NCBI GenBank assembly: GCA_965240325.2
Contig: OZ251237.1
Span: 1,054,001 to 1,118,000, forward strand
Source: Rebecca billardiae RCC1528
Lineage: Eukaryota > Protista > Haptophyta
Length of the DNA stretch: 64,000 bases
Reading direction: 5' to 3'
Part shown: positions 41,874 to 51,213 of the stretch, one piece after another
How the letters are laid out: each line of letters begins with the position of its first letter
Position numbering within the stretch: position 1 is the first letter of the stretch
Notes under the pieces: generated by a model
What the model saw: the letters and a program-made list of their open reading frames with translations, nothing else
Told to the model about the DNA's origin: nothing
Databases searched by the model: none
Position numbers and translations under genes: made by a program

Positions 41874-42860
41874 TCACCAATCACCACGGCAATGCTGCTG
41901 CTGCAGCTGCTCGTAGTCCCGCGACTGACGATATTGGCCGCGCAGCATGCACACGATCTCGCGCGTGGTCTCGGTGAGCGCGGGGAGCGCTGCAAACATG
42001 ACGAACGCCGGCACCACGCTCTTTACCAGCGACGCATGCACACCGGCGAAGAGGCCGCCAGCACCGGCGGTGGAGAGCACTTTGCGGGCCACGCTGAGCA
42101 TTGACGGTGGCGTGTCTGCCTGGCTGGTCATCACGATGGACTTGATGGTGTTCAGCGGCGCAGTCGACACTTCGGCGAGCATGCCCGCGAGTACGCCGAC
42201 GAGCCCGGAGGTGAGAGCCGGATGAGAGTGCCAAGCTTCACAGCGCGAGGCGTGCTCGAGCAGCACGCGGTAGCCCACCCATTGCACGGTGGTGCCGAGC
42301 ACAGTCGGCAGCACGTTTGCGCCCAGCACAGTCGGCGACAGCAGCGTCATAGCGTCGAGGGCCAGCGCGCCGCCCGAGTTTGCGATGGCACGCTTCTTGG
42401 CCACCTCGAGCGGCGTGTTCACAACGGCCGCGGCGATCGCGCCGCCGAGGGACCGAGCAACCACGGCACCGGGCGGGAGCGACTGGGCAAGCTTCGCATC
42501 TGCAAAGAAGAACGCGACATTGCCGAGCGCGGCGCATCCGAGCGCCCAGCCGAGTCCGGCGAGGAGCGGAAATCTCGGCGCGCTCGCCACGCTACGCCCG
42601 TTGGCAAGGACCACGTCGCGCGGATGCGGATGCGCGACGCCGCGCTGCACCTGCGCGCGCGTGGCGGCGACTTCGAACGGCCACGCGGCAATCGTCGCGA
42701 GCACGCCAGAGCACGTACCAGCCACCACCCTGACGAGCACATCGTCAGAGCTCGCCTCAGTGGGCACAACAGATAGCTCTCGGTGCTTCTCAGGCCCGTT
42801 TCCCGCGAGCATCGTGAGCACGCGATGCGCGGGCTCGAGCAGGACGGGGTGGACGCGCAT
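41874..42860 (-). CDS. divergent mitochondrial carrier family (SLC25) protein
   Basis: Three Px[DE]xx[KR]-like motifs (PFEVAATRAQ, PLEVAKKR, PLNTIKS) plus GAGGLFAG; start uncertain. Confidence 0.8.
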   Translation of the reverse strand: MRVHPVLLEPAHRVLTMLAGNGPEKHRELSVVPTEASSDDVLVRVVAGTCSGVLATIAAWPFEVAATRAQVQRGVAHPHPRDVVLANGRSVASAPRFPLLAGLGWALGCAALGNVAFFFADAKLAQSLPPGAVVARSLGGAIAAAVVNTPLEVAKKRAIANSGGALALDAMTLLSPTVLGANVLPTVLGTTVQWVGYRVLLEHASRCEAWHSHPALTSGLVGVLAGMLAEVSTAPLNTIKSIVMTSQADTPPSMLSVARKVLSTAGAGGLFAGVHASLVKSVVPAFVMFAALPALTETTREIVCMLRGQYRQSRDYEQLQQQHCRGDW

Positions 42861-43371
42861 CGCGACGGGGGGCCAGTCTGGTTCCAGCGGGGGACGGGGT
42901 CTCGATCGCACAGCCAGCGTGCGTTCGCCGAGCGGGAGGGGCCGTGTGTTGTACAGATGTACAGTTTATTTGTTTTAACGTGCGTAAGGCTCACGGTGGC
43001 AGGTTGCCGCGCCATCCATTACTTGTACTTAGATTCCACGCGAGAATACTATCATACTGTACGTACTAGTATGCTTGCTCTGAAGGCGAAATCAAAGGAC
43101 GAGATATGAGAATTCTCGCGATGACGTCAAGCGCACGTCATTCGTCCACGTCTGGTTGCTCCAGACGCCCGCGGGTACAGTCCGACTCGACATTCGACCT
43201 TGATCTGGACCTCAATCCGAGATGTGCTGGCTCCCGATTCCCGACCCGACCGAGCAGGGCTTCTCGGGACGCGCGTTCGTAGCCACAGTCCACACACCAT
43301 CGGACCAGCCGCACCAGCCTGCGACAGCCTCTCCGCGCCGAACCGCCCCAACCCCGTCGTCGACGAGCCTC

Positions 43372-45541
43372 ATGAGCAACTGCGCGTACGTGACGTTCCT
43401 CGAGGGTGACAGCGAGTACCTTCTCGGTGTGCTCGCTCTCGCTCGCTCGCTCAAGCTCAACCAGTGCAAGTTCAAGCTCATCGTGTGCTGCACGCCGACG
43501 GTGCCGCCGAGCGCGCGAGAGCGCCTCGCCGCCGAGCCAAACGGTGCGCAGCGACGTGCGACCCGCGACGCGCTGGCCATGTGCAACGTGCGACGCAATC
43601 GCGTCGTGCAACCTGTAAATCCGTACTTCTCAACGACCCCTTCGCCCCCGCACCGCGCACTGGCCCGCGTCACCTGTGCTGTCCGCACGTGCGCGCGCAG
43701 TCGAAGTGCGCGGCATCGAGTGGCTGGAGCTGCCCGCCCACCTCGCAACGGACACGGAGAAGCTCGCCAACCCGCAGGTGCGCGAGCGTCATGCAATGCA
43801 ATGTTCTACCTCGCACCCGGCGGTGGCCTCGCCCGGCGATGCTGCGACGCTCGGGCACGTCCGCGTCCACGCGCCCACGTACGCGCGCGCTCACTCGAGC
43901 GCCCCGTCCTCCGCTCCCGCGCCGCGCAGTTCGTGCGCAACTTCACCAAGCTCCGGCTGTGGCAGCTGACCGACCTCAACAAGTGCGTGTATCTCGACGC
44001 GGACGCGCTCGCGCTGTCCTGCCTCGACGACATGTTCCTCGCCCCCGCCTTCTCCGCGGTGCTCGACAACATGGCCGCCGACGCGGAGTTCTCTGAGACT
44101 AAGTTCCAGACGCCCGGCTGGGCCGTGCGCACTGCGCACGCCGAGCCCAAGCGGTCCTACTTCAACGCGGGCGTGTTCGTCTTTGAGCCGTCCGAAGCCG
44201 AGTTCAACTCGATGATGGAAGACCTCGCCACCTTCCCGCTCACCCGCTTCGCCGAGCAGGACTTCCTGAACGCGCGGCACGCGGGTCGTTGGAACCAGCT
44301 GCCCCTGTCGTTCAACTGGGGCAAGCCGTCGTTCTGGCTGTGCCCGCAGCTGTGCTGCTTCGACGCGCTCAAGGTTGTGCACTTCTCGGGGCGGCTCAAG
44401 CCGTGGATGCGCGCGCGCGACGGCACGTGGCGGGCGACGGACGTGGCGGCGGCCAGCCCGATCGAGAGGGCGGCGGTGTGCGGCAAGGACGCCACACCTC
44501 CGGACGAGAACCTCGCGCGCGCCGTCGACCGCTGGTGGGCAGCGTTCGACTCGGGGCACGGCGCGCTGGCGTCGGTGCGCGGCGCGACGGCGCAGCCAGC
44601 CGAGCCGTCGTCCGTCGTGCTCCGCGAGCTGCCCGCGCCCGCGCCCAGCCCCTCCGTCTCCAAGGCCGCCCCGCCCAAGCTGCTCTTTGTCGTGCACCGC
44701 GCGTACCCTCACGACGGCGGCTCCGAGTACTACGTGCACTGGCTCGCCTCCGAGGCCGCGAGCCGCGGCGTGCAGGTGACGGTGCTCGCGGGCACGCACA
44801 AGGGCAGCCAGGTGCGCGCGCAGCCGCGCGAGCAGCGGGGCCAGCGCTCGCGCGCGCGCGCGCTCGCGTGCTCACCGCGGCCCGCGCTCGCCCCGGCCCG
44901 CGCCTGCACGCTCGCGTGCCCATCCGCGCGCGCAGGGCGACGTCCGCGTCACCTCCGACCTGGGCATCCTCACGAGCGAGCGCTTCGACGCGATCGTCGT
45001 GCACGGCAGCGACTGCACCACCCAGGACCAGGTGCTCACCGAGCTGGGCGCCGGCCGCGTCGCCTCTCCGGTCGTGTACCTCATCATCAAGCCGTCTGAT
45101 TCGCCGACTTCGCTCGCGGGCCTGCGGCATGCGGCGCTGGTCGGCTGCTCCACCGCGGCGGACTGGGCGCATGCGCGCGCGCACGGCGTGGAGGCGTCGC
45201 GGCTCGCGCAGATCACGCACGGCGTCGACGCTCGGACAGCGAGCGGCGCGCCCGGCTTCCGCGCGCGCCACGCGATCCCTCCGAACGGCCGCCTCTTCGT
45301 GAGCGCGGGCGGCTTCGGCCCGCACAAGCGGATGCTCGAGCTCGCGCGCGCGTTTGGCGCGGCGCGTCGCGAGGGCGACGTGCTCATCCTCTTCGGCTAC
45401 CAGCAGCACCCGGTGCGTGCGCTCGCCGCGCGCCGCGCGTGCTCGCTCGAAGCGCGCGTGTCCCGCCGTGTAGCTTGTGCTCACGCCACGCCCTCCGACC
45501 CCGCGTCTGGACCACGCTCCCTGCGCGCGCCCGGTGCCCAC

Positions 45542-45572
<31 letters not shown>

Positions 45573-47231
45573 GCCGCCGCTGCGACGCCGCCGCCGCCGC
45601 GCGCGCAGGACGGCGAGGACTACCTCGACGCGTGCCGCACCGCGTCCGAGGGCGTGCGCGTGGTGCTGGGCGCGCCGCGGCAGGAGGTGCTGGACGCGCT
45701 GGCGGAGGCGGACCTGTACGTGATGCACTCCGAGTGGGAGGGCTTCGGGCTCGTGCTGATCGAGGCGATGCTCAACGGCTGCTGCTGGGCGGCGAACGCG
45801 CGCGCGGGCGCGGCGACCGACCTCGGCCGCTTCGGGTACGCGTACGCCGACGACGAGGAGCTGATCTCGATCATGCAGCGCGCGCGCCGGCTGCCACCGC
45901 AGCGGCGCAAGGCGCTGCAGCTCAGCGCGCTCACGCGGTACAGCGTGCGCACGCCGATCGACGAGCTGCATCGCGCGCTCGCGCGGCGCGCGGGCACGGG
46001 CGTCGCGCTCGGCTCGGCGCCGCCGCCGCCGATGCCGCCGTGCCACGACCCGCCGCTGCTGCCGCCCTCGGCCTCGGCGCGCCGGCGCGCGTGCTACGCG
46101 ACCCTGCTGCACGGCAGCGGCGACTACTACCTCGGCGTGCTCGCGCTCAAGCACTCGCTCGACCGCGCGGGCGCCAAGCTCCCGTTCGTCGTCGCCGTGA
46201 CCGAGGCCGTGCCCGAGTCGCACCGCGCCGTGCTGCGCGCCGCGGGCTGCGAGGTGCGCGCGGAGGCGCTGCCGCGGTTCGCCCGCTCGGCCAGGGGCGC
46301 GCTGCGCCGCGAGTTCGTCGCGTGCTTCGCCAAGCTCGCGCTGTGGGGCTGGACCGAGTACGACGCGGTCGTGTACGTCGACGGCGACATGGTGGTCACG
46401 CGCTCCCTCGACCACCTCGCAGACGTCGAGCTGCCCGAGCCCGACGTGCCGCTGCCGATCGCCGCGGCGCGCGACCTCGGCGACGCGACGCGCCGCACCG
46501 GGCTCTCGCGCACGCGCGCGGGCAAGGTGTACTTCAACGCGGGCCTGATGGTGCTCCGGCCGAGCGCGGCGGCGTGCGCGCACCTCGAGGCGGCGGCGCA
46601 CGACGTGCACACGCTCTCGCTCCCGTACGCGGAGCAGGACCTGCTCAACGACCACGTGGACACGGCGCTGCTCGAGCTGCCGCAGACGTACAACTGCCAC
46701 GTGGACAAGCTCGGCTCGCCCGAGTACGAGGCGGAGGTGGACGCGGCGTGCGGCGCGCTCGAGCTGCCCGCTGTCTTCCACTACTGCGGGCCCAAGCCGT
46801 GGCGCACGCTGCCGCCCGTCGCCACCGCGCCCGACGCGCAGCACGCGGACGCGGGCGGCGTGCTGCACCGGACGCGCTCCGCCGCCGCGCTCGACGAGTG
46901 GTGGAAGCATGGCGCGTTCCACGTGAAGAAGTCGCGCCGCGCCGGCGGCGGCGCCGGGGCGCATGCGGACGGCGGCGCGCTCACCGACACGTCCGCCGGG
47001 GGCGACGAGATCCCGCACGTGGAGAGCCTGGCCTTGCTCGCGTCCACCGAGACCGCTCTGGACGCGGGGCCCGTCTCCGCGCAGTCCTCTTCGAGCAGCC
47101 TGGAGGCGGAGCAGCAGCTCGTCGAGGCGATGGTGGTCAAGCCGGACAAGGCGCGCGCCGCCCAGGCGAGCAGCACGACGACGGACTTGACCCTGGCCGC
47201 TGCTGAGGCGCGCGCTCGTCGCTCCGCATGA
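43372..47231 (+). CDS. tri-domain glycosyltransferase GT8-GT4(GT-B)-GT8
   Basis: Exons 43372-43543, 43701-43777, 43930-44811, 44936-45412, 45609-47231, all GT-AG and in frame. GT8 #1: AYVTFL, KLRLW, YLDAD, YFNAGVFVFEPS, FAEQDFLN, VHF..KPW. GT4: LFVVHR..GGSE, DLYVMHSEWEGFGLVLIEAM. GT8 #2: YATLL, KLALW, YVDGD, YFNAGLMV, AEQDLLN, HYCGPKPW. Confidence 0.9.
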
Positions 47232-47502: not shown

Positions 47503-49748
47503 TCATTCGGTCAAACCCTCCTCGTCGTCTGAGTCGAAATCGACGACGTGGCGGGGCACAGCAGCGTCGGCGCCGCCTGCCGCGCCCCCGCGATGCGACC
47601 GGTGCTGCCCCTCCAGCTCCTCGATCCGCGCCTGCGCCTCGGCGAGCTCGAGCCGGAGCGTGATCAGGTCCTTCACGTCGTCCTCCAGCGACGCGTTGTG
47701 GTGCTTGAGCCGCACGAGCTCGGAGCGCGCCTCCTGGTACTTCACCTCGAGCCACGTCATCTCCTCCGCGACCTTGCGGCTGCCGCCGCGCACCTTCTCG
47801 AGCTCCTGCGCCACCGTGCGCGCCTCGTGCCGCGCCTGCCCGGGCGCGGCGCGCGCGGCGCGCGCGCAGCGTGACGTGCCGCGCTCAGCGCAGCGGCGCG
47901 CGGCGTGCTCCCACGCCGCGAGTGCGCGCGCGCACCGCTCGCGCGGGTCGGGAGGGGGCGAGGGGCGAAGGGAGCGCGCGTGTGCGCCGCGCGTGCGTGC
48001 GCGCACACCTGCTCGCCCTCAAACTCGACGGTCGCCAGCGCCATCTTGGCCTCGACGAGCGCGAGCTGCAGCTCGGTGCGTGCCATATCCTCCTCCTCCT
48101 CCTCCTCCTCCTCCCCAGCCGCCGCGCCCCGCGCCGCCCGCCCCTCGTGCTGCGCGAGAGCGCGCGTGAGCTGGGCGCTGGTGTGCTGCGCGCTCTCCAG
48201 CTCACGGCTGCGCTCCTGCAGCGCGGAGTGCACCTCGAGCAGCTCGGCGCGAAGCTCGGCGGTGAGTCTGCGCTGCTCGTCCAGCTCCGCCACGAGCTCC
48301 GCGTCGCGCGCCCCAGGCGGCGACTCCGTCACCACCGCCGCGTCCGCGTGCGCGCCCCGCTGGTGCAGAGCAGCCTGCAGTGAGCGCGCGGCCTGCTGCG
48401 CGGCCACCGCCTCCGCCACCGCGCGCTCGCGCTCCTCGCGCGCCGCTGCGAGCTCGGCTCGCAGCTCGGCGAGCTCCTCGGACGAGCGGTGTTCGGCTTG
48501 CGCGTGCTCGGCGCCCGGCGGCGTACCATCGAAGCCGCCCTGCGCCCACGGGTCGACGTGCTTCAGCTGCCGCGGCGCCGCTGCTCCGCTGCCGGGCGGC
48601 GCGCCGGGCGCGCTGCCGTCGCGCGCGCCGTCCTGCGCGCCCGGCCCGCCAAGGTGCGGCTGCGCGTACGCAGCCGCAGACGCCGCACCTGCGGGCGCTC
48701 TCCCCTCGTCCTGCAGCCCCGGCCGCTCCTCCCCGCCCGCGTGCCCCGCGCCCAGCCGCCCGTCCGAGCCGTCGGCAGGCTGGGCGTGCGCAGACCCGCC
48801 GCCCGCAGGCGCCGGGCTGGCACGGGAGGGGAGCGAGGATGACGGCGTGTGCACCGCCGCGCCGCCCGCGCCGCCGGGCGTGAGTGGCGGCTGGTCGGCG
48901 GGGCCGAGGCGCTCGGCGGCGTGGATCGCCGCCGCCTCCGACCCCTCCGACCCGCGCCCCGCCGCACGCGCGCCAGCCGGCTGCGCCTCCGAGCCGTTGA
49001 CGCGCCGCTCGGACCGCTTGCTGTGCAGGCCCTCGCGGATCACACCGAGCTTGCCCATCCGCGCGCGCGCGAGCGCGGCCGCGCGCTGGTGGGGCGACTG
49101 GCGCGTGCCGTCGTCGAAGCCCTCGAGGTTCTGCTCCTCGTTCGACCCGGCGGACGGCCCCGTGTGCGGAGAGAAGCCGGTCAGGTTCGACGAGATCGAG
49201 CGTGCGTCCGAGGGCGAGGGCGAGCCTGCGCCGAGGTCGCGCAGCCAGCGGCAGCCGATCTCGGTGCGCAGCGTGGCGTAGAAGACGGGCTTGGCCTTCC
49301 AGCTCAGCCTGAGCAGCACGGGCTCGCGTGCCTCCGCCTCGCTCGTCCGCACGTACTCGGCGAGGTCGATGTCCGTGCCCGCCACCTCTGTGAGCTTCTT
49401 CTTGTGCGTGCCAAACTCTCCCGGCATCACCGCGCACAGCGAGATGCGGTACACCTTGTCGCTCCAGCGCTTGTCGGGCTTCTTGCTCGCGTACATCGTG
49501 CACACCACCGACATCCGCTCGTTCCACACGGCCTTGCCGTCCACCACCTCGCCCTCCGACGTCGACATGACCTTTGGACCGCGCATGCACGTCACGAGCA
49601 TGCCGGTCGCGCCGCGCATGTCCGGGATGTTGTCCACGGTCTGCACGACGAGGTCGAAGTGGAACTTGGACCACTCGCGCCCGTAGTGCTTCCCCGCGTG
49701 CGCCGCGCGGTGCCTGAGCGAGCTCGCCCGCTCCTTCACCTTGTCCAT
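47503..49748 (-). CDS. NT-C2 (EEIG1/EHBP1-type) domain protein with C-terminal coiled coil
   Basis: N-terminal KFHFDLVVQTV..RGPK..GKAVWNE..CTMY..DKVYRI..IDLAEY, a low-complexity linker and heptad-rich C-terminus. Exons 49748-48009 and 47835-47503. Confidence 0.82.
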
Positions 49749-49944
49749 CGCCCCGGGCCGCCAGTGGGAGCCCGCAGCGCTCGCAGTCCCAGTGACCCAG
49801 TCGCCGCTGCGGCGCTGCCGCTTACAGTACCTCGGCGGCGGACGGTGTGTTAGAACTCCGCAACGATGGCGGCCGGCGGACGCCTGGTTGTGGCATGACC
49901 TGGCTGGATCGCTGCTGGCTGGTTGTGGGGACCCCTGGTTTGAC

Positions 49945-51213
49945 ATGTCGGGCCTCGGACGCTCGTTCGAGACGCTGAGCTTCGTCTCAGGCGTGCTGAG
50001 CACGTGGCTCACCAACCGGCAGCTGCGCCAAGCCGCCGAGCAGCACGAGTCGGGCCTGCGCTACTCGGCGGAGCTGCACCTGCAGCAGCTCAGCAGCAGC
50101 TTGCAGGCGCACTACCAGGCGGTCGCCTCGTCGTTCGTCGAGGCGGCGCAGGAGGCGGATCGGGACGTGTGGGAGCAGCGCAACTCGCAGTTCAACACCA
50201 AGCTGCTCGCCTCCACCCTCATGTTTGGTGTGGCGATGGAGCTCACGATCGAGGGGCAGGTCCCTGACAACGCGAACGACACGTGCCTCGTGCTGCTCGC
50301 CACGTGCCAGGCGTGCGCGATCGCCGCGCTCGGTAACTCGATCCTGCTAGCGTTCATCCTCACTCGGCGCATGGCGCACTTCATGGTCGAGCGCGCCGAG
50401 CGCAACGCGCGCACCCGCCGCCGGCTGCTGCGGCACGCGCAGCACCTCACCCGCCGCATCGGCGAGTGGGCGACCAGCTCCGAGGCCAACTCCACGCAGC
50501 TCCTCGCAGCTGCGGACGGCACGCCGACTTCGGGGCCAAAGGCCTCTCCTCCGAGCGACGCGACCGTCGAGATGGTCGCTCGGCTTGTGCAGTGCATCAA
50601 TCGCTTCCAGGACGAGCTCTCACAGCCCATCCTGAGCTCGGCCTGCGCAGGCGTGGGCGCCGACGAGGACGAGCTCGAGCCCGAGCCAGAGGGCGTGCAG
50701 ACGTTCACGGCGTTCTGGGACACGCACTGCGACCACATCGCGCGCTGGTGCACGCAGGGCTTCTACGCGGGCGGGCTCGCCGTGTGGAGCGCGGTGACCC
50801 TCTACTTCGCGCTCGTCCTCGACGACGCACACCACAACTGGCTGGCGGCCGCGAGCTTCCTGCTCATCTCGAGCGCAGGCGGCGCGTACGCCGTGTGTGT
50901 GCTCGTGCGCGAAGAGCTCATCGACCGCACGGAGTACTGGCACCCCTTGCAGGCACGCGCGAGCCGCCATCGCCGGGCCAGCGTGGGCGGCGCAAGCAGG
51001 CGGCGTGGGGTCCATGCAAAGCGAGCCGCAGACCAACCCCAACGGCGGAGCCAGGGTGCCACTCAGCATTGGCACAAGCTCGACGAGACGGCCGCGCCCG
51101 CAGCGACGAGACGACGGCCATCGGCTGATGACTATGGTGACGACTACGACTCTGCTGACGATGACGATGAAGACGGCGGTGACTACGACGATGCAGCTGA
51201 CGGCGACGCCTGA
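49945..51213 (+). CDS. 4-TM membrane protein, Orai/CRAC-like
   Basis: TM1 STLMFGVAMELTIEGQ aligns without gaps to Orai TM1 SALLSGFAMVAMVEVQ as recalled; three further hydrophobic helices; acidic C-tail. Confidence 0.6.
   Translation: MSGLGRSFETLSFVSGVLSTWLTNRQLRQAAEQHESGLRYSAELHLQQLSSSLQAHYQAVASSFVEAAQEADRDVWEQRNSQFNTKLLASTLMFGVAMELTIEGQVPDNANDTCLVLLATCQACAIAALGNSILLAFILTRRMAHFMVERAERNARTRRRLLRHAQHLTRRIGEWATSSEANSTQLLAAADGTPTSGPKASPPSDATVEMVARLVQCINRFQDELSQPILSSACAGVGADEDELEPEPEGVQTFTAFWDTHCDHIARWCTQGFYAGGLAVWSAVTLYFALVLDDAHHNWLAAASFLLISSAGGAYAVCVLVREELIDRTEYWHPLQARASRHRRASVGGASRRRGVHAKRAADQPQRRSQGATQHWHKLDETAAPAATRRRPSADDYGDDYDSADDDDEDGGDYDDAADGDA

What the first reader, a model, noticed from the sequence alone, without database searches (positions are those of the whole stretch)
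43372..47231. GT8-GT4-GT8 triple glycosyltransferase in one polypeptide
Seen: spliced translation gives two complete GT8 (GT-A) domains, each with DxD, FNAG, EQD and H..KPW motifs, flanking a GT-B/GT4 domain with an EX7E motif (EGFGLVLIE). The GT8#1-GT4 and GT4-GT8#2 junctions lie inside exons, so the fusion is not a splicing artefact. Known: GT8 includes glycogenin and galactinol synthase, and GT4 includes osmolyte and sugar-phosphate synthases. Inference: a single-chain assembly line for an oligosaccharide, osmolyte or scale/wall glycan, possibly self-priming. I do not know this architecture from characterised proteins.
Basis: partly seen in the sequence, partly recalled or inferred. Interest (0 to 1): 0.8.

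Follow-up and report, generated by a model that had tools for sequence, protein, structure and literature searches.

The report
Three-enzyme sugar-adding protein, alga
A GC-rich, haptophyte-like alga has one real spliced gene that joins three sugar-transferring enzymes in a single soluble protein, and the middle enzyme is of a type otherwise found mainly in bacteriophages; a few other algae share the design as unnamed proteins, but nobody has studied it and its product is unknown.

Summary
Window 43372-47231 (+) is a five-exon gene encoding a 1076-aa GT8-GT4-GT8 protein. All four introns are GTGCG...GCGCAG. Both domain junctions lie inside exons 3 and 5.

No RNA run was listed for this genome. 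Three relatives show the fusion is a single product:
- A complete 1014-aa Prymnesium parvum transcript (51% identity) has the same layout. Three GenBank "hypothetical proteins" share its 90%-identity cluster.
- An unidentified marine eukaryote encodes the same layout as one uninterrupted 1090-aa ORF.
- A 60%-identical metagenomic relative shares intron 3 and lacks intron 4.

All catalytic motifs are intact. The protein has no signal peptide or membrane helix, so it is probably cytosolic.

Both GT8 domains are glycogenin/galactinol-synthase-like. Chlorodendrophyte green algae have the same GT8-GT8 pair without the GT4.

The GT4 belongs to a compact ~315-aa subfamily. It is 39-47% identical to hundreds of metagenomic proteins. 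Four of six contexts sampled were phage or phage-like, and the nearest Atlas structure clusters are 95-100% tailed-phage.

An exhaustive search of 1.84 billion representatives found only about ten proteins of the fusion family. No paper mentions it.

Most likely function (inferred): three successive alpha-sugar transfers that build a short soluble glycoside or oligosaccharide. Glycogenin-style self-priming is not supported. I rate it a new variant of a known kind, of moderate interest.

The parts
43372..43543 (+). Exon 1: start codon and N-terminal strand/helix of GT8 domain 1 (MSNCAYVTFLEGD...)
   Evidence: Model. It aligns to P0003 and to relative L001. L001 also starts only 9 residues before the AY(C/V)TF motif, and the in-frame upstream stretch 43222-43371 is not conserved.
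43544..43700 (+). Intron 1 (157 nt, phase 1, GTGCGC...GCGCAG)
43701..43777 (+). Exon 2 (77 nt): VEVRGIEWLELPAHLATDTEKLANPQ, part of GT8 domain 1
   Evidence: It aligns to P0003 'VVIRRIDWLELPPAI...ANPQ'. The equivalent small exon is found in L001.
43778..43929 (+). Intron 2 (152 nt, phase 0)
43930..44811 (+). Exon 3: catalytic core of GT8 domain 1 (TKL, DAD, FNAG, EQD, H..KPW), a ~35-aa linker and the N-terminal start of the GT4 domain (HRAYPHDGGSEYYVHWLA)
   Evidence: Pfam PF01501 E 4.7e-20, plus a weak PF13439, in one ORF. Glycogenin-1 is the best PDB match, E 1.7e-13. Covers aa 84-377 of the model.
44812..44935 (+). Intron 3 (124 nt, phase 0), inside the GT4 domain; the position is conserved in relative L001
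44936..45412 (+). Exon 4: middle of the GT4 (GT-B) domain, from the end of the N-lobe to the start of the C-lobe (IKPS, ST..D, SAGGFGPHK)
   Evidence: It aligns to P0003, P0047 and P0007. The family-invariant residues are kept.
45413..45608 (+). Intron 4 (196 nt, phase 0, with a (GCC)n run); absent in relative L001
   Evidence: In L001, aa 376-971 lie in one ORF.
45609..47231 (+). Exon 5: GT4 C-lobe with EX7E (EGFGLVLIE), a Pro-rich linker, the complete GT8 domain 2 (DGD, FNAG, EQD, H..KPW), a ~115-aa non-conserved low-complexity tail, and the stop codon
   Evidence: Pfam PF00534 E 1.4e-8 and PF01501 E 6.2e-17 in one ORF. PDB matches: Gat1 (6mw5) and glycogenin.

Best explanation
The region is one intact five-exon nuclear gene of a GC-rich, haptophyte-like alga. 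It encodes a soluble, probably cytosolic, 1076-aa protein with three complete retaining-glycosyltransferase domains.

Shown:
- The order is a glycogenin/galactinol-synthase-like GT8 (GT-A fold), a compact GT4 (GT-B fold), then a second GT8 of the same clan.
- It belongs to a very small, uncharacterised family found in Prymnesium parvum and in a few uncultured marine eukaryotes.
- The two GT8 domains are orthologous to the two halves of a GT8-GT8 tandem protein in chlorodendrophyte green algae.
- The GT4 domains of all the fusion proteins form one clade. That clade sits inside a large family of stand-alone ~315-aa GT4 proteins, which in the contexts sampled occur mostly in glycan-synthesis cassettes of tailed phages.

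Inferred history: a phage- or bacterial-type GT4 was acquired once and came to lie between two GT8 modules. It has since gained spliceosomal introns.

Inferred mechanism: GT8 and GT4 are both retaining families that use UDP- or NDP-sugars, and all catalytic motifs are intact. The enzyme most likely makes three successive alpha-glycosidic transfers in the cytosol, building a short alpha-linked glycoside or oligosaccharide on a soluble acceptor such as a polyol, cyclitol or sugar. Confidence is about 0.9 for the gene and architecture, about 0.7 for the prokaryotic-virus/bacterial origin of the GT4, and about 0.4 for the small-molecule sequential-transfer function.
For: Gene model:
- Canonical GT...AG introns, no internal stop, and GC3 of 95%.
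- Colinear alignment with P0003 across all junctions.

Single polypeptide:
- The junctions lie inside single ORFs.
- P0003 is an MMETSP ORF marked 'complete', 1014 aa, with GT8 x2 plus Glycos_transf_1. Its 90%-identity cluster contains P. parvum KAL1519533, KAL1519535 and KAL1519537.
- P0111 is one uninterrupted 1090-aa ORF with the same layout on contigs L004 and L005. Its DUF501 neighbour is of eukaryotic type.
- L001 carries the same gene, with aa 376-971 in one exon.

Intact sites:
- GT8 motifs align to the glycogenin motifs.
- 31 of 33 invariant positions of the GT4 family are kept, including G346/G347, H400, K505, E575 and E583.

Folds (modelled on orthologue P0003):
- The GT4 domain alone has pLDDT 93.9 and pTM 0.89. 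Its nearest solved structures are retaining GT-B enzymes.
- The full-length model has pLDDT 83 and pTM 0.69, with three folded domains and disordered linkers.

Soluble: maximum 19-residue hydropathy is 1.3-1.7 within folded cores, and there is no N-terminal signal in the window protein, P0003, P0094 or P0111.

GT8 relationships: domain-1 clade 100, domain-2 clade 99. The chlorodendrophyte halves fall in the matching clades. Domains 1 and 2 plus plant galactinol synthases form a clade with support 96.

GT4 origin:
- More than 900 stand-alone relatives at 39-47% identity over 90% of the domain.
- Contexts include T4-like phage genes (gp44/45, RegA, gp23, gp15) and glycan cassettes.
- The eukaryotic GT4 clade has support 100 and lies within this diversity.
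- Atlas structural neighbours have TM 0.94-0.95 and are 95-100% Uroviricota.

Rarity: about 10 fusion-family representatives among 1.84 billion.
Against: - No transcript data were available for this genome, so internal promoters or alternative isoforms cannot be excluded.
- Donor sugars, acceptor and product are entirely inferred.
- Fold neighbours of the GT4 span glycogen synthase, sucrose alpha-1,2-glucosyltransferase, BshA, MshA, SPS and WaaG without discrimination.
- All NCBIfam hits are far below their cut-offs.
- The GT8 tree did not include glycogenin, Gat1 or PGSIP/GUX, so the 'GolS-like' placement is relative only to the sequences sampled.
- The phage origin rests on a few sampled contexts and on Atlas taxon labels. 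One context looks bacterial (L010) and one is ambiguous (L012).
- tblastn against deposited phage genomes found nothing.
- The GT4 tree is unrooted.
- Insertion of the GT4 versus its loss in chlorodendrophytes is unresolved (AU p 0.33).
- Cytosolic location rests only on the absence of hydrophobic segments.
Confidence: 0.6

Rival explanations
1. It is a co-polymerase. The three active sites act repeatedly rather than once each, and elongate a repeating alpha-linked polysaccharide. This would resemble LARGE (GT8+GT49) or multi-domain bacterial capsule polymerases.
For: Multi-catalytic single-chain glycosyltransferases are typically polymerases (established knowledge of LARGE1 and capsule polymerases). 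A TagF-like capsule polymerase, Cps3D, appears among weak PDB sequence hits of the GT4. The stand-alone GT4 relatives sit in polysaccharide-type cassettes in phages. The full-length model's pTM of 0.69 hints at a fixed domain arrangement.
Against: There is no membrane anchor, exporter or secretory signal that would handle a polymer. No cytosolic alpha-glycan polymer is known to me in haptophytes (my own knowledge, not tested). The chlorodendrophyte version works without the GT4, which fits modular stepwise addition better than an obligatory repeat unit.
Confidence: 0.2
2. It is a cytoplasmic protein glycosyltransferase. It would modify a specific protein, as Gat1 does on Skp1, or itself, as glycogenin does, and so prime or regulate something else.
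For: The closest solved structures of both GT8 domains are glycogenin-1 (E 3e-22 for P0003 domain 1) and Gat1, the cytoplasmic Skp1 alpha-galactosyltransferase (best hit for window domain 2, E 9.7e-7). Gat1 is a cytoplasmic GT8 of protists (bioRxiv 10.1101/764241). The Skp1 pathway also uses a two-domain fused glycosyltransferase (my own knowledge).
Against: In the window protein the region aligned to glycogenin's acceptor Tyr195 reads F-W-L, with no tyrosine. The aromatic position is W in L001's protein, Prasinocladus and Tetraselmis, and only Prymnesium has Y there. In the tree both GT8 domains group with plant galactinol synthases, which are small-molecule enzymes. The matches to Gat1 are weak. 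Haptophytes store beta-glucan, not glycogen (my own knowledge).
Confidence: 0.15
3. It is a Golgi or secretory enzyme that builds scale, wall or theca glycans.
For: The organism is a haptophyte-like alga with many multi-domain secretory glycosyltransferases, according to earlier unchecked notes of this scan. GT8 includes Golgi wall enzymes such as GAUT and GUX (established knowledge). Relatives occur in thecate Tetraselmis.
Against: There is no signal peptide or transmembrane helix in the window protein or in three full-length orthologues. The N-terminus begins almost directly with the GT8 fold, here and in L001. The GT8 clan it matches (glycogenin, GolS, Gat1) is the cytosolic one.
Confidence: 0.05
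4. It is a gene-model artefact. In this genome the region would be two or three adjacent genes, or a decaying pseudogene, rather than one expressed fusion.
For: No RNA run was listed for this genome. Prokaryote-style gene callers split the region into pieces (P0001 here; 397 + 553 aa on L001).
Against: Both junctions lie inside continuous ORFs. There are no in-frame stops, splice sites are canonical and GC3 is 95%. Invariant residues are conserved. Orthologues exist as a single transcript and as a single intronless ORF. Flanking genes are on the opposite strand and unrelated.
Confidence: 0.04

Closest known systems
Glycogenin-1 / Gat1 (cytoplasmic GT8 retaining transferases; PDB 3t7m, 6mw5)
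   Same: Both GT8 domains share the GT-A fold class, the DxD and His metal-binding motifs, and the TKL, FNxG, (E/D)Q(D/G) and H..G..KPW motifs. Like these enzymes, the protein has no secretory signal. They are the best PDB matches.
   Different: Identity is only about 25-30%. The acceptor Tyr195 of glycogenin is not conserved in the window protein. GT8#1 carries a family-specific insert of about 35 aa. There are two copies in one chain, with a GT4 between them. No glycogen-synthase-binding tail is evident.
Plant galactinol synthase (GolS, GT8; UDP-Gal:myo-inositol alpha-galactosyltransferase)
   Same: Apart from the family itself, these are the best named sequence hits of GT8#1 (about 29-31% identity, E 1e-17 to 1e-19). 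Both GT8 domains group with streptophyte GolS against other algal GT8s (support 96). GolS is also a soluble cytosolic enzyme acting on a small acceptor.
   Different: GolS is a single-domain protein of about 340 aa. The window domains form their own long-branched clades. No assay or acceptor-site comparison was possible. Glycogenin, Gat1 and PGSIP were not in the tree.
Compact ~315-aa GT4 proteins of tailed phages (metagenomic; e.g. P0224, P0167, P0126; PHROG 2170 is matched only weakly)
   Same: 39-47% identity over about 90% of the domain. The same 33 invariant positions are present. Predicted structures superpose at TM 0.94-0.95 and rmsd 1.6-1.7 A.
   Different: These proteins are stand-alone and sit in phage glycan cassettes. 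Here the domain is embedded between two GT8 domains in a eukaryotic gene and is interrupted by two spliceosomal introns. The function of the phage proteins is itself unknown.
LARGE1 (GT8 + GT49) and PgtA (GT2 + GT74): bifunctional single-chain eukaryotic glycosyltransferases
   Same: They follow the same principle of fusing successive glycosyltransferase activities in one polypeptide. LARGE contains a GT8 domain, and PgtA is cytoplasmic (established knowledge).
   Different: The family combination differs: there is no GT49, GT2 or GT74 here. This protein has three catalytic domains rather than two, and all are from retaining families. There is no membrane anchor, unlike LARGE.
Chlorodendrophyte GT8-GT8 proteins (Prasinocladus P0004, Tetraselmis sp. 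GSL018 A0A061R241 = P0005)
   Same: Their two halves are orthologous to GT8#1 and GT8#2 of the window protein (clade supports 100 and 99; alignment).
   Different: They have no GT4 between the halves, only a linker of about 35 aa. They are also uncharacterised.

Membership tests
CAZy GT8 / Pfam PF01501 (two domains) | Significant match to the Glyco_transf_8 profile above the gathering score | tested here: met
   72.7 bits (exon-3 ORF) and 62.4 bits (exon-5 ORF), against a cut-off of 24.3.
CAZy GT8 / Pfam PF01501 (two domains) | DxD and a downstream His (H..KPW) for Mn2+/UDP binding, plus the TKL Lys and the FNxG and xQD motifs | tested here: met
   Domain 1 has DAD, FNAG, EQD and HFSGRLKPW; domain 2 has DGD, FNAG, EQD and HYCGPKPW. 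For domain 1 they align to the same motifs of glycogenin-1. For domain 2 the printed PDB alignments cover only TKL/DxD and FNAG.
Glycogenin (self-glucosylating primer) | Acceptor tyrosine (Tyr195 in human GYG1) in the loop before the H..KPW motif | tested here: not met
   The window sequence aligned to glycogenin's 'SIYSY' reads 'SFW-L' or 'S-FWL' in the two printed alignments, so there is no Tyr. Prymnesium has Y, but the other relatives have W. The domain-2 region could not be aligned.
Galactinol synthase (GolS) | Phylogenetic placement within or sister to characterised GolS, and myo-inositol acceptor activity | tested here: inconclusive
   Domain 1, domain 2 and plant GolS form a clade with SH-aLRT 96 among the sampled GT8s, but as an unresolved three-way split and without glycogenin, Gat1 or PGSIP in the tree. 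Activity cannot be tested with these tools.
CAZy GT4 / Pfam PF00534 (retaining GT-B) | Match to the Glycos_transf_1 profile, the EX7E motif and a two-Rossmann GT-B fold | tested here: met
   PF00534 scores 34.9 bits against a cut-off of 26.4 in the window, and 47.1 bits in P0003. EX7E is E575...E583. The AF2 model of the orthologous domain has pLDDT 93.9, and its top Foldseek hits are GT4/GT5 GT-B enzymes with probability 1.00.
BshA / MshA (GT4 enzymes with small-molecule acceptors) | Score above the NCBIfam equivalog cut-off | tested here: not met
   TIGR03999 BshA scores 32.5 bits against a cut-off of 273.7. All other NCBIfam hits are also far below their cut-offs.
Compact phage-type GT4 subfamily (unnamed) | About 315-aa domain length, the family's 33 (near-)invariant residues, and high identity across the whole domain | tested here: met
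   31 of 33 positions are identical in the window. Identity is 39-47% over 90% of the domain. Atlas TM is 0.94-0.95. The eukaryotic clade lies within the family tree.
GT8-GT4-GT8 fusion family (unnamed; P. parvum KAL1519533 and relatives) | Same domain order, colinear over the full length, and orthologous domains | tested here: met
   About 51% identity to P0003 (exon-3 region) and 49% to P0111 over aa 4-938, with a colinear full-length alignment to P0003. Domain trees place each window domain with the matching domain of the family.
Anti-phage defence glycosyltransferases (PADLOC; Pfam 'GT4-conflict') | Match to defence-system models | tested here: not met
   There were no PADLOC hits. PF20706 scores 23 bits in the window, below its cut-off of 26.

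The most novel reading that the evidence does not exclude
An alga domesticated a bacteriophage glycosyltransferase by placing it between the two halves of a tandem galactinol-synthase-like enzyme. The result is a cytosolic one-chain, three-step synthase for an alpha-linked glycoside or oligosaccharide, such as a compatible solute or signalling sugar, that has not yet been described in haptophytes. Finding the product would reveal a new algal metabolite class. It would also be a rare documented case of a phage auxiliary gene built into a spliced eukaryotic enzyme.
Probability: 0.3. Interest if true: 0.7.

Novelty: new variant of a known kind. Interest (0 to 1): 0.5.

Why it matters
Single-chain multi-glycosyltransferases usually mark a defined multi-step product, so this family points to an alpha-linked glycan or glycoside in haptophyte-type algae that nobody has identified. 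These algae include the fish-killing bloom former Prymnesium parvum. The family is small, soluble and intron-poor in some lineages, which should make recombinant expression and donor/acceptor screening straightforward. The middle domain also suggests that a glycosyltransferase type otherwise found mainly in tailed phages was incorporated into a eukaryotic nuclear gene and acquired introns. That is of interest for horizontal gene transfer and for understanding what the unstudied phage glycan cassettes make. By itself the finding does not open a long-standing question, and the function remains inferred.

Tried and rejected
- RNA evidence: the look-up of sequencing runs listed no run.
- Deposited phage genomes: tblastn with the GT4 domain found nothing.
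- IMG/VR: a pattern scan with P0111 found nothing, so the intronless copy is not evidently viral. Its DUF501 neighbour looks eukaryotic.
- NCBIfam, PHROGs and PADLOC gave no specific functional family.
- Foldseek against the PDB returned only generic GT4/GT5 neighbours, which do not indicate donor or acceptor.
- The Atlas feature search reported a 665-aa 'Bacteria' GT4+GT8 cluster. The exhaustive HMMER search listed no such protein among its best 150, so I take that cluster, without having checked it, for binned fragments of the eukaryotic family.
- The context of L012 was ambiguous: NYN, methyltransferase, GT2 and an SMC-like ATPase.
- Six literature searches found nothing on this architecture. 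Two papers read for leads on algal glycosides and osmolytes gave none.
- The upstream in-frame ATG at 43222 was considered as the start. I rejected it as less likely because the extension is not conserved in L001.
- Glycogenin, Gat1 and PGSIP could not be added to the GT8 tree, because no tool returned them as referable sequences and I did not type sequences from memory or printouts.
- The organism was not identified. Earlier notes of this scan call it haptophyte-like. The spliced 1076-aa protein has no single reference, so searches and folds used its exon pieces or orthologues P0003 and P0111.


Full report
**Observation and gene model**

The six-frame ORF list and the sequence show three long + strand ORF pieces in different frames between 43222 and 47231. 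GC is 68-78%.

Joining the pieces at GT...AG sites gives five exons: 43372-43543, 43701-43777, 43930-44811, 44936-45412 and 45609-47231. Together they total 3231 nt and encode 1076 aa with no internal stop. The four introns are 124-196 nt, and each begins GTGCG and ends GCGCAG.

Codon-position GC is 72/52/95%, against 78% in the introns. This is the strong third-position bias expected of real coding sequence in this genome.

Pfam on single uninterrupted ORF pieces finds Glyco_transf_8 (E 4.7e-20) plus the start of a GT4 N-domain in the exon-3 frame. In the exon-5 frame it finds Glycos_transf_1 (E 1.4e-8) plus Glyco_transf_8 (E 6.2e-17).

The flanking genes are on the opposite strand: a mitochondrial carrier at 41874-42911 and an NT-C2 protein at 47757-50015. 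The gene is bounded on both sides.

The start at 43372 is favoured over the upstream in-frame ATG at 43222. The closest relative also begins only nine residues before the first GT8 strand, and the upstream stretch is not conserved.

**Is it one polypeptide?**

No RNA run was listed for this genome, so direct transcript evidence is missing. Relatives supply it:

- P0003 is an MMETSP ORF marked 'complete', 1014 aa long, 51% identical over the exon-3 region searched and colinear over the full length. It has two GT8 hits flanking Glycos_transf_1. Its 90%-identity cluster contains three Prymnesium parvum GenBank proteins of 1014-1017 aa: KAL1519533, KAL1519535 and KAL1519537. GenBank labels them 'hypothetical protein'; UniRef labels them 'Glycosyl transferase family 1 domain-containing protein'.
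- My spliced model aligns with P0003 across all four exon junctions without indels.
- P0111 is a single uninterrupted 1090-aa ORF with the same three domains, on contigs L004 and L005 (GC 52%). It is colinear with the model at 49% identity. Its DUF501 neighbour most resembles eukaryotic (diatom-labelled) clusters, and an IMG/VR scan found nothing. I take it to be an unidentified intron-poor marine eukaryote.
- L001 to L003 are metagenomic contigs (L001 GC 71%) that carry a 60%-identical copy. It has the small exon 2 and intron 3 at the same place but lacks intron 4, so aa 376-971 (most of the GT4, the linker and GT8#2) form one exon.

**The protein**

No 19-residue window reaches membrane-helix hydropathy outside folded cores. 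There is no N-terminal signal in the window protein, P0003, P0094 or P0111. The protein is most likely soluble and cytosolic.

AlphaFold2 on orthologue P0003, using a 79-row alignment, gives mean pLDDT 83 and pTM 0.69. It shows three well-folded domains at about 30-313, 325-664 and 711-1005, with low-confidence linkers. The spliced window protein itself has no single reference, so it could not be submitted.

*GT8 domains*

- The best solved relatives are glycogenin-1 (E 3e-22 for P0003 domain 1; E 1.7e-13 for the window exon-3 piece). For domain 2 the best is the cytoplasmic Skp1 alpha-galactosyltransferase Gat1, PDB 6mw5 (E 9.7e-7).
- The TKL, DxD, FNxG, xQD and H..KPW motifs align to those of glycogenin.
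- Glycogenin's acceptor Tyr195 is not conserved. The aligned window sequence is F-W-L. Relatives have W at the aromatic position, except Prymnesium, which has Y. Self-priming at the homologous site is therefore not supported.
- In a tree of 43 GT8 domains, all first domains form one clade (support 100) and all second domains another (99).
- The two halves of the Prasinocladus and Tetraselmis GT8-GT8 proteins, which lack a GT4, fall in the matching clades.
- Domain 1, domain 2 and streptophyte galactinol synthases together form a clade (96), separate from other algal GT8s. Glycogenin, Gat1 and PGSIP were not in that tree.
- An AU test does not reject monophyly of the GT4-bearing second domains (p 0.33). 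Insertion of the GT4 into a GT8-GT8 ancestor and loss of the GT4 in chlorodendrophytes both remain possible.

*GT4 domain*

- Searched alone, it has more than 900 relatives of about 313-335 aa at 39-47% identity over about 90% of its length.
- Sampled genomic contexts are as follows:
  - T4-like phage contigs with gp44/45, RegA and endonuclease VII (L008).
  - A 314-kb contig with gp23, gp15 and a prohead protease.
  - Two further phage-like contigs, L006 and L009. The GT4 typically sits in a cassette with GT2, GT10, sugar methyltransferases and nucleotide-sugar enzymes.
  - One context looks bacterial (L010).
  - One MAG context is ambiguous (L012).
- A pattern-limited scan of 185,579 bacterial and archaeal species genomes kept only two full-length family matches, both on MAG contigs.
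- The AF2 model of the domain has pLDDT 93.9 and pTM 0.89. Its nearest ESM-Atlas clusters are 314-319-aa GT4 clusters at TM 0.94-0.95 and rmsd 1.6-1.7 A. Their labelled members are 95-100% Uroviricota. The feature search points the same way.
- In an 80-sequence tree the six eukaryotic GT4 domains form one clade (support 100) within this diversity. Their sister group has moderate support and includes a phage-like contig protein.
- The window keeps 31 of the family's 33 invariant or near-invariant residues, including the GG loop, H400, K505 and E575/E583 of EX7E.
- Foldseek against the PDB returns generic retaining GT-B enzymes: glycogen synthase, sucrose alpha-1,2-glucosyltransferase tll1591, HepE, BshA, MshA, SPS and WaaG.
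- NCBIfam hits are far below their cut-offs, PADLOC finds nothing, and deposited phage genomes give no tblastn hit.

**How common is the architecture?**

An exhaustive HMMER profile search of 1.84 billion cluster representatives found 136 proteins at E <= 1e-30. Only about ten belong to the fusion family, most of them fragments, plus the chlorodendrophyte GT8-GT8 proteins. The rest of the top hits are stand-alone GT4 or GT8 proteins.

The word-index search restricted to long proteins found seven hits. They included two GT2/GT7C-GT4 fusions and phage 565-aa proteins that use the same GT4 type.

Six literature searches found no paper on the architecture or on the accession numbers.

**Interpretation**

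Shown:
- It is a real, intact, single-chain GT8-GT4-GT8 gene.
- It belongs to a small, uncharacterised algal family.
- All three active sites look competent.
- It has no secretory features.
- Its GT4 is of a compact type found predominantly in phages.

Inferred:
- All three domains come from retaining families, so the protein probably makes three alpha-linkages in succession in the cytosol.
- The GT8 domains sit next to galactinol synthases, and several fold neighbours of the GT4 act on small acceptors. I therefore favour a soluble glycoside or short oligosaccharide (about 0.4).
- The alternatives are a repeating polymer (about 0.2), protein glycosylation (about 0.15) and a Golgi wall or scale role (about 0.05).
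- That the region is really several genes or a pseudogene I put at about 0.04.

**Comparison and novelty**

Fused successive glycosyltransferases are a known principle, as in LARGE and PgtA. Each domain here belongs to a known CAZy family, and orthologues are already in databases as unnamed proteins. This is not categorically new.

The three-domain order appears undescribed, as does the insertion of a phage-type GT4 into a galactinol-synthase-like tandem. I rate it a new variant of a known kind, with interest 0.5.

An earlier first-reader note on this same stretch (s1-360858) had already suspected a prokaryote- or phage-derived GT4 with introns. My searches support that suspicion independently.

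Noticed in passing
loci L008, L006, L009; proteins P0224, P0118, P0126, P0167: Hundreds of compact ~315-aa GT4 genes sit in glycan-synthesis cassettes of uncultured T4-like and other large phages. Their partners include GT2, GT10 fucosyltransferase, TylF-type methyltransferases, UDP-glucose dehydrogenase and epimerases. What these cassettes make is unknown, and no deposited phage genome matched the algal GT4 domain (P0003) by tblastn.
   Followed up: partly
proteins P0116, P0117 (646-648 aa, metagenomic): The same GT4 type is fused behind a GT2/Glyco_transf_7C domain in another architecture. The source organism is unknown.
   Followed up: no
proteins P0004 (Prasinocladus malaysianus) and P0005 (Tetraselmis sp. 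GSL018): Chlorodendrophyte green algae have the orthologous GT8-GT8 tandem without the GT4. Whether the GT4 was inserted in the other lineages or lost here is unresolved (AU p 0.33).
   Followed up: partly
window about 44050-44160 (model aa ~126-160): GT8 domain 1 carries an insert of about 35 aa (AVLDNMxADxxFxxxxFQxP...) that is conserved across the family. It lies between the DxD strand and the FNAG motif, is absent from glycogenin, and has low confidence in the model of the orthologue. It may be an acceptor lid or an inter-domain contact.
   Followed up: no
window 45413-45608: Intron 4 contains a (GCC)n run at about 45540-45600 and is absent from the 60%-identical relative L001, whereas intron 3 is shared. 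Intron gain or loss has therefore been recent in this lineage.
   Followed up: partly
window 41874-42911 (-) and 47757-50015 (-): The neighbours are a mitochondrial-carrier gene, divergent from the glycosyltransferase gene with about 460 bp between them, and an NT-C2 (EEIG1/EHBP1-type) domain protein with a long Ala/Gly/Arg-rich tail, convergent with it.
   Followed up: partly
Prymnesium parvum proteins P0093-P0095: P. parvum carries three near-identical copies. Two have locus tags two apart (AB1Y20_001089 and AB1Y20_001091) and one lies elsewhere (AB1Y20_023052). This suggests recent duplication or haplotigs.
   Followed up: no
window 46930-47228 (model aa ~965-1076): The C-terminal tail of about 115 aa is low-complexity (Ala/Gly/Ser/Thr-rich) and is not conserved in any orthologue.
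   Followed up: no
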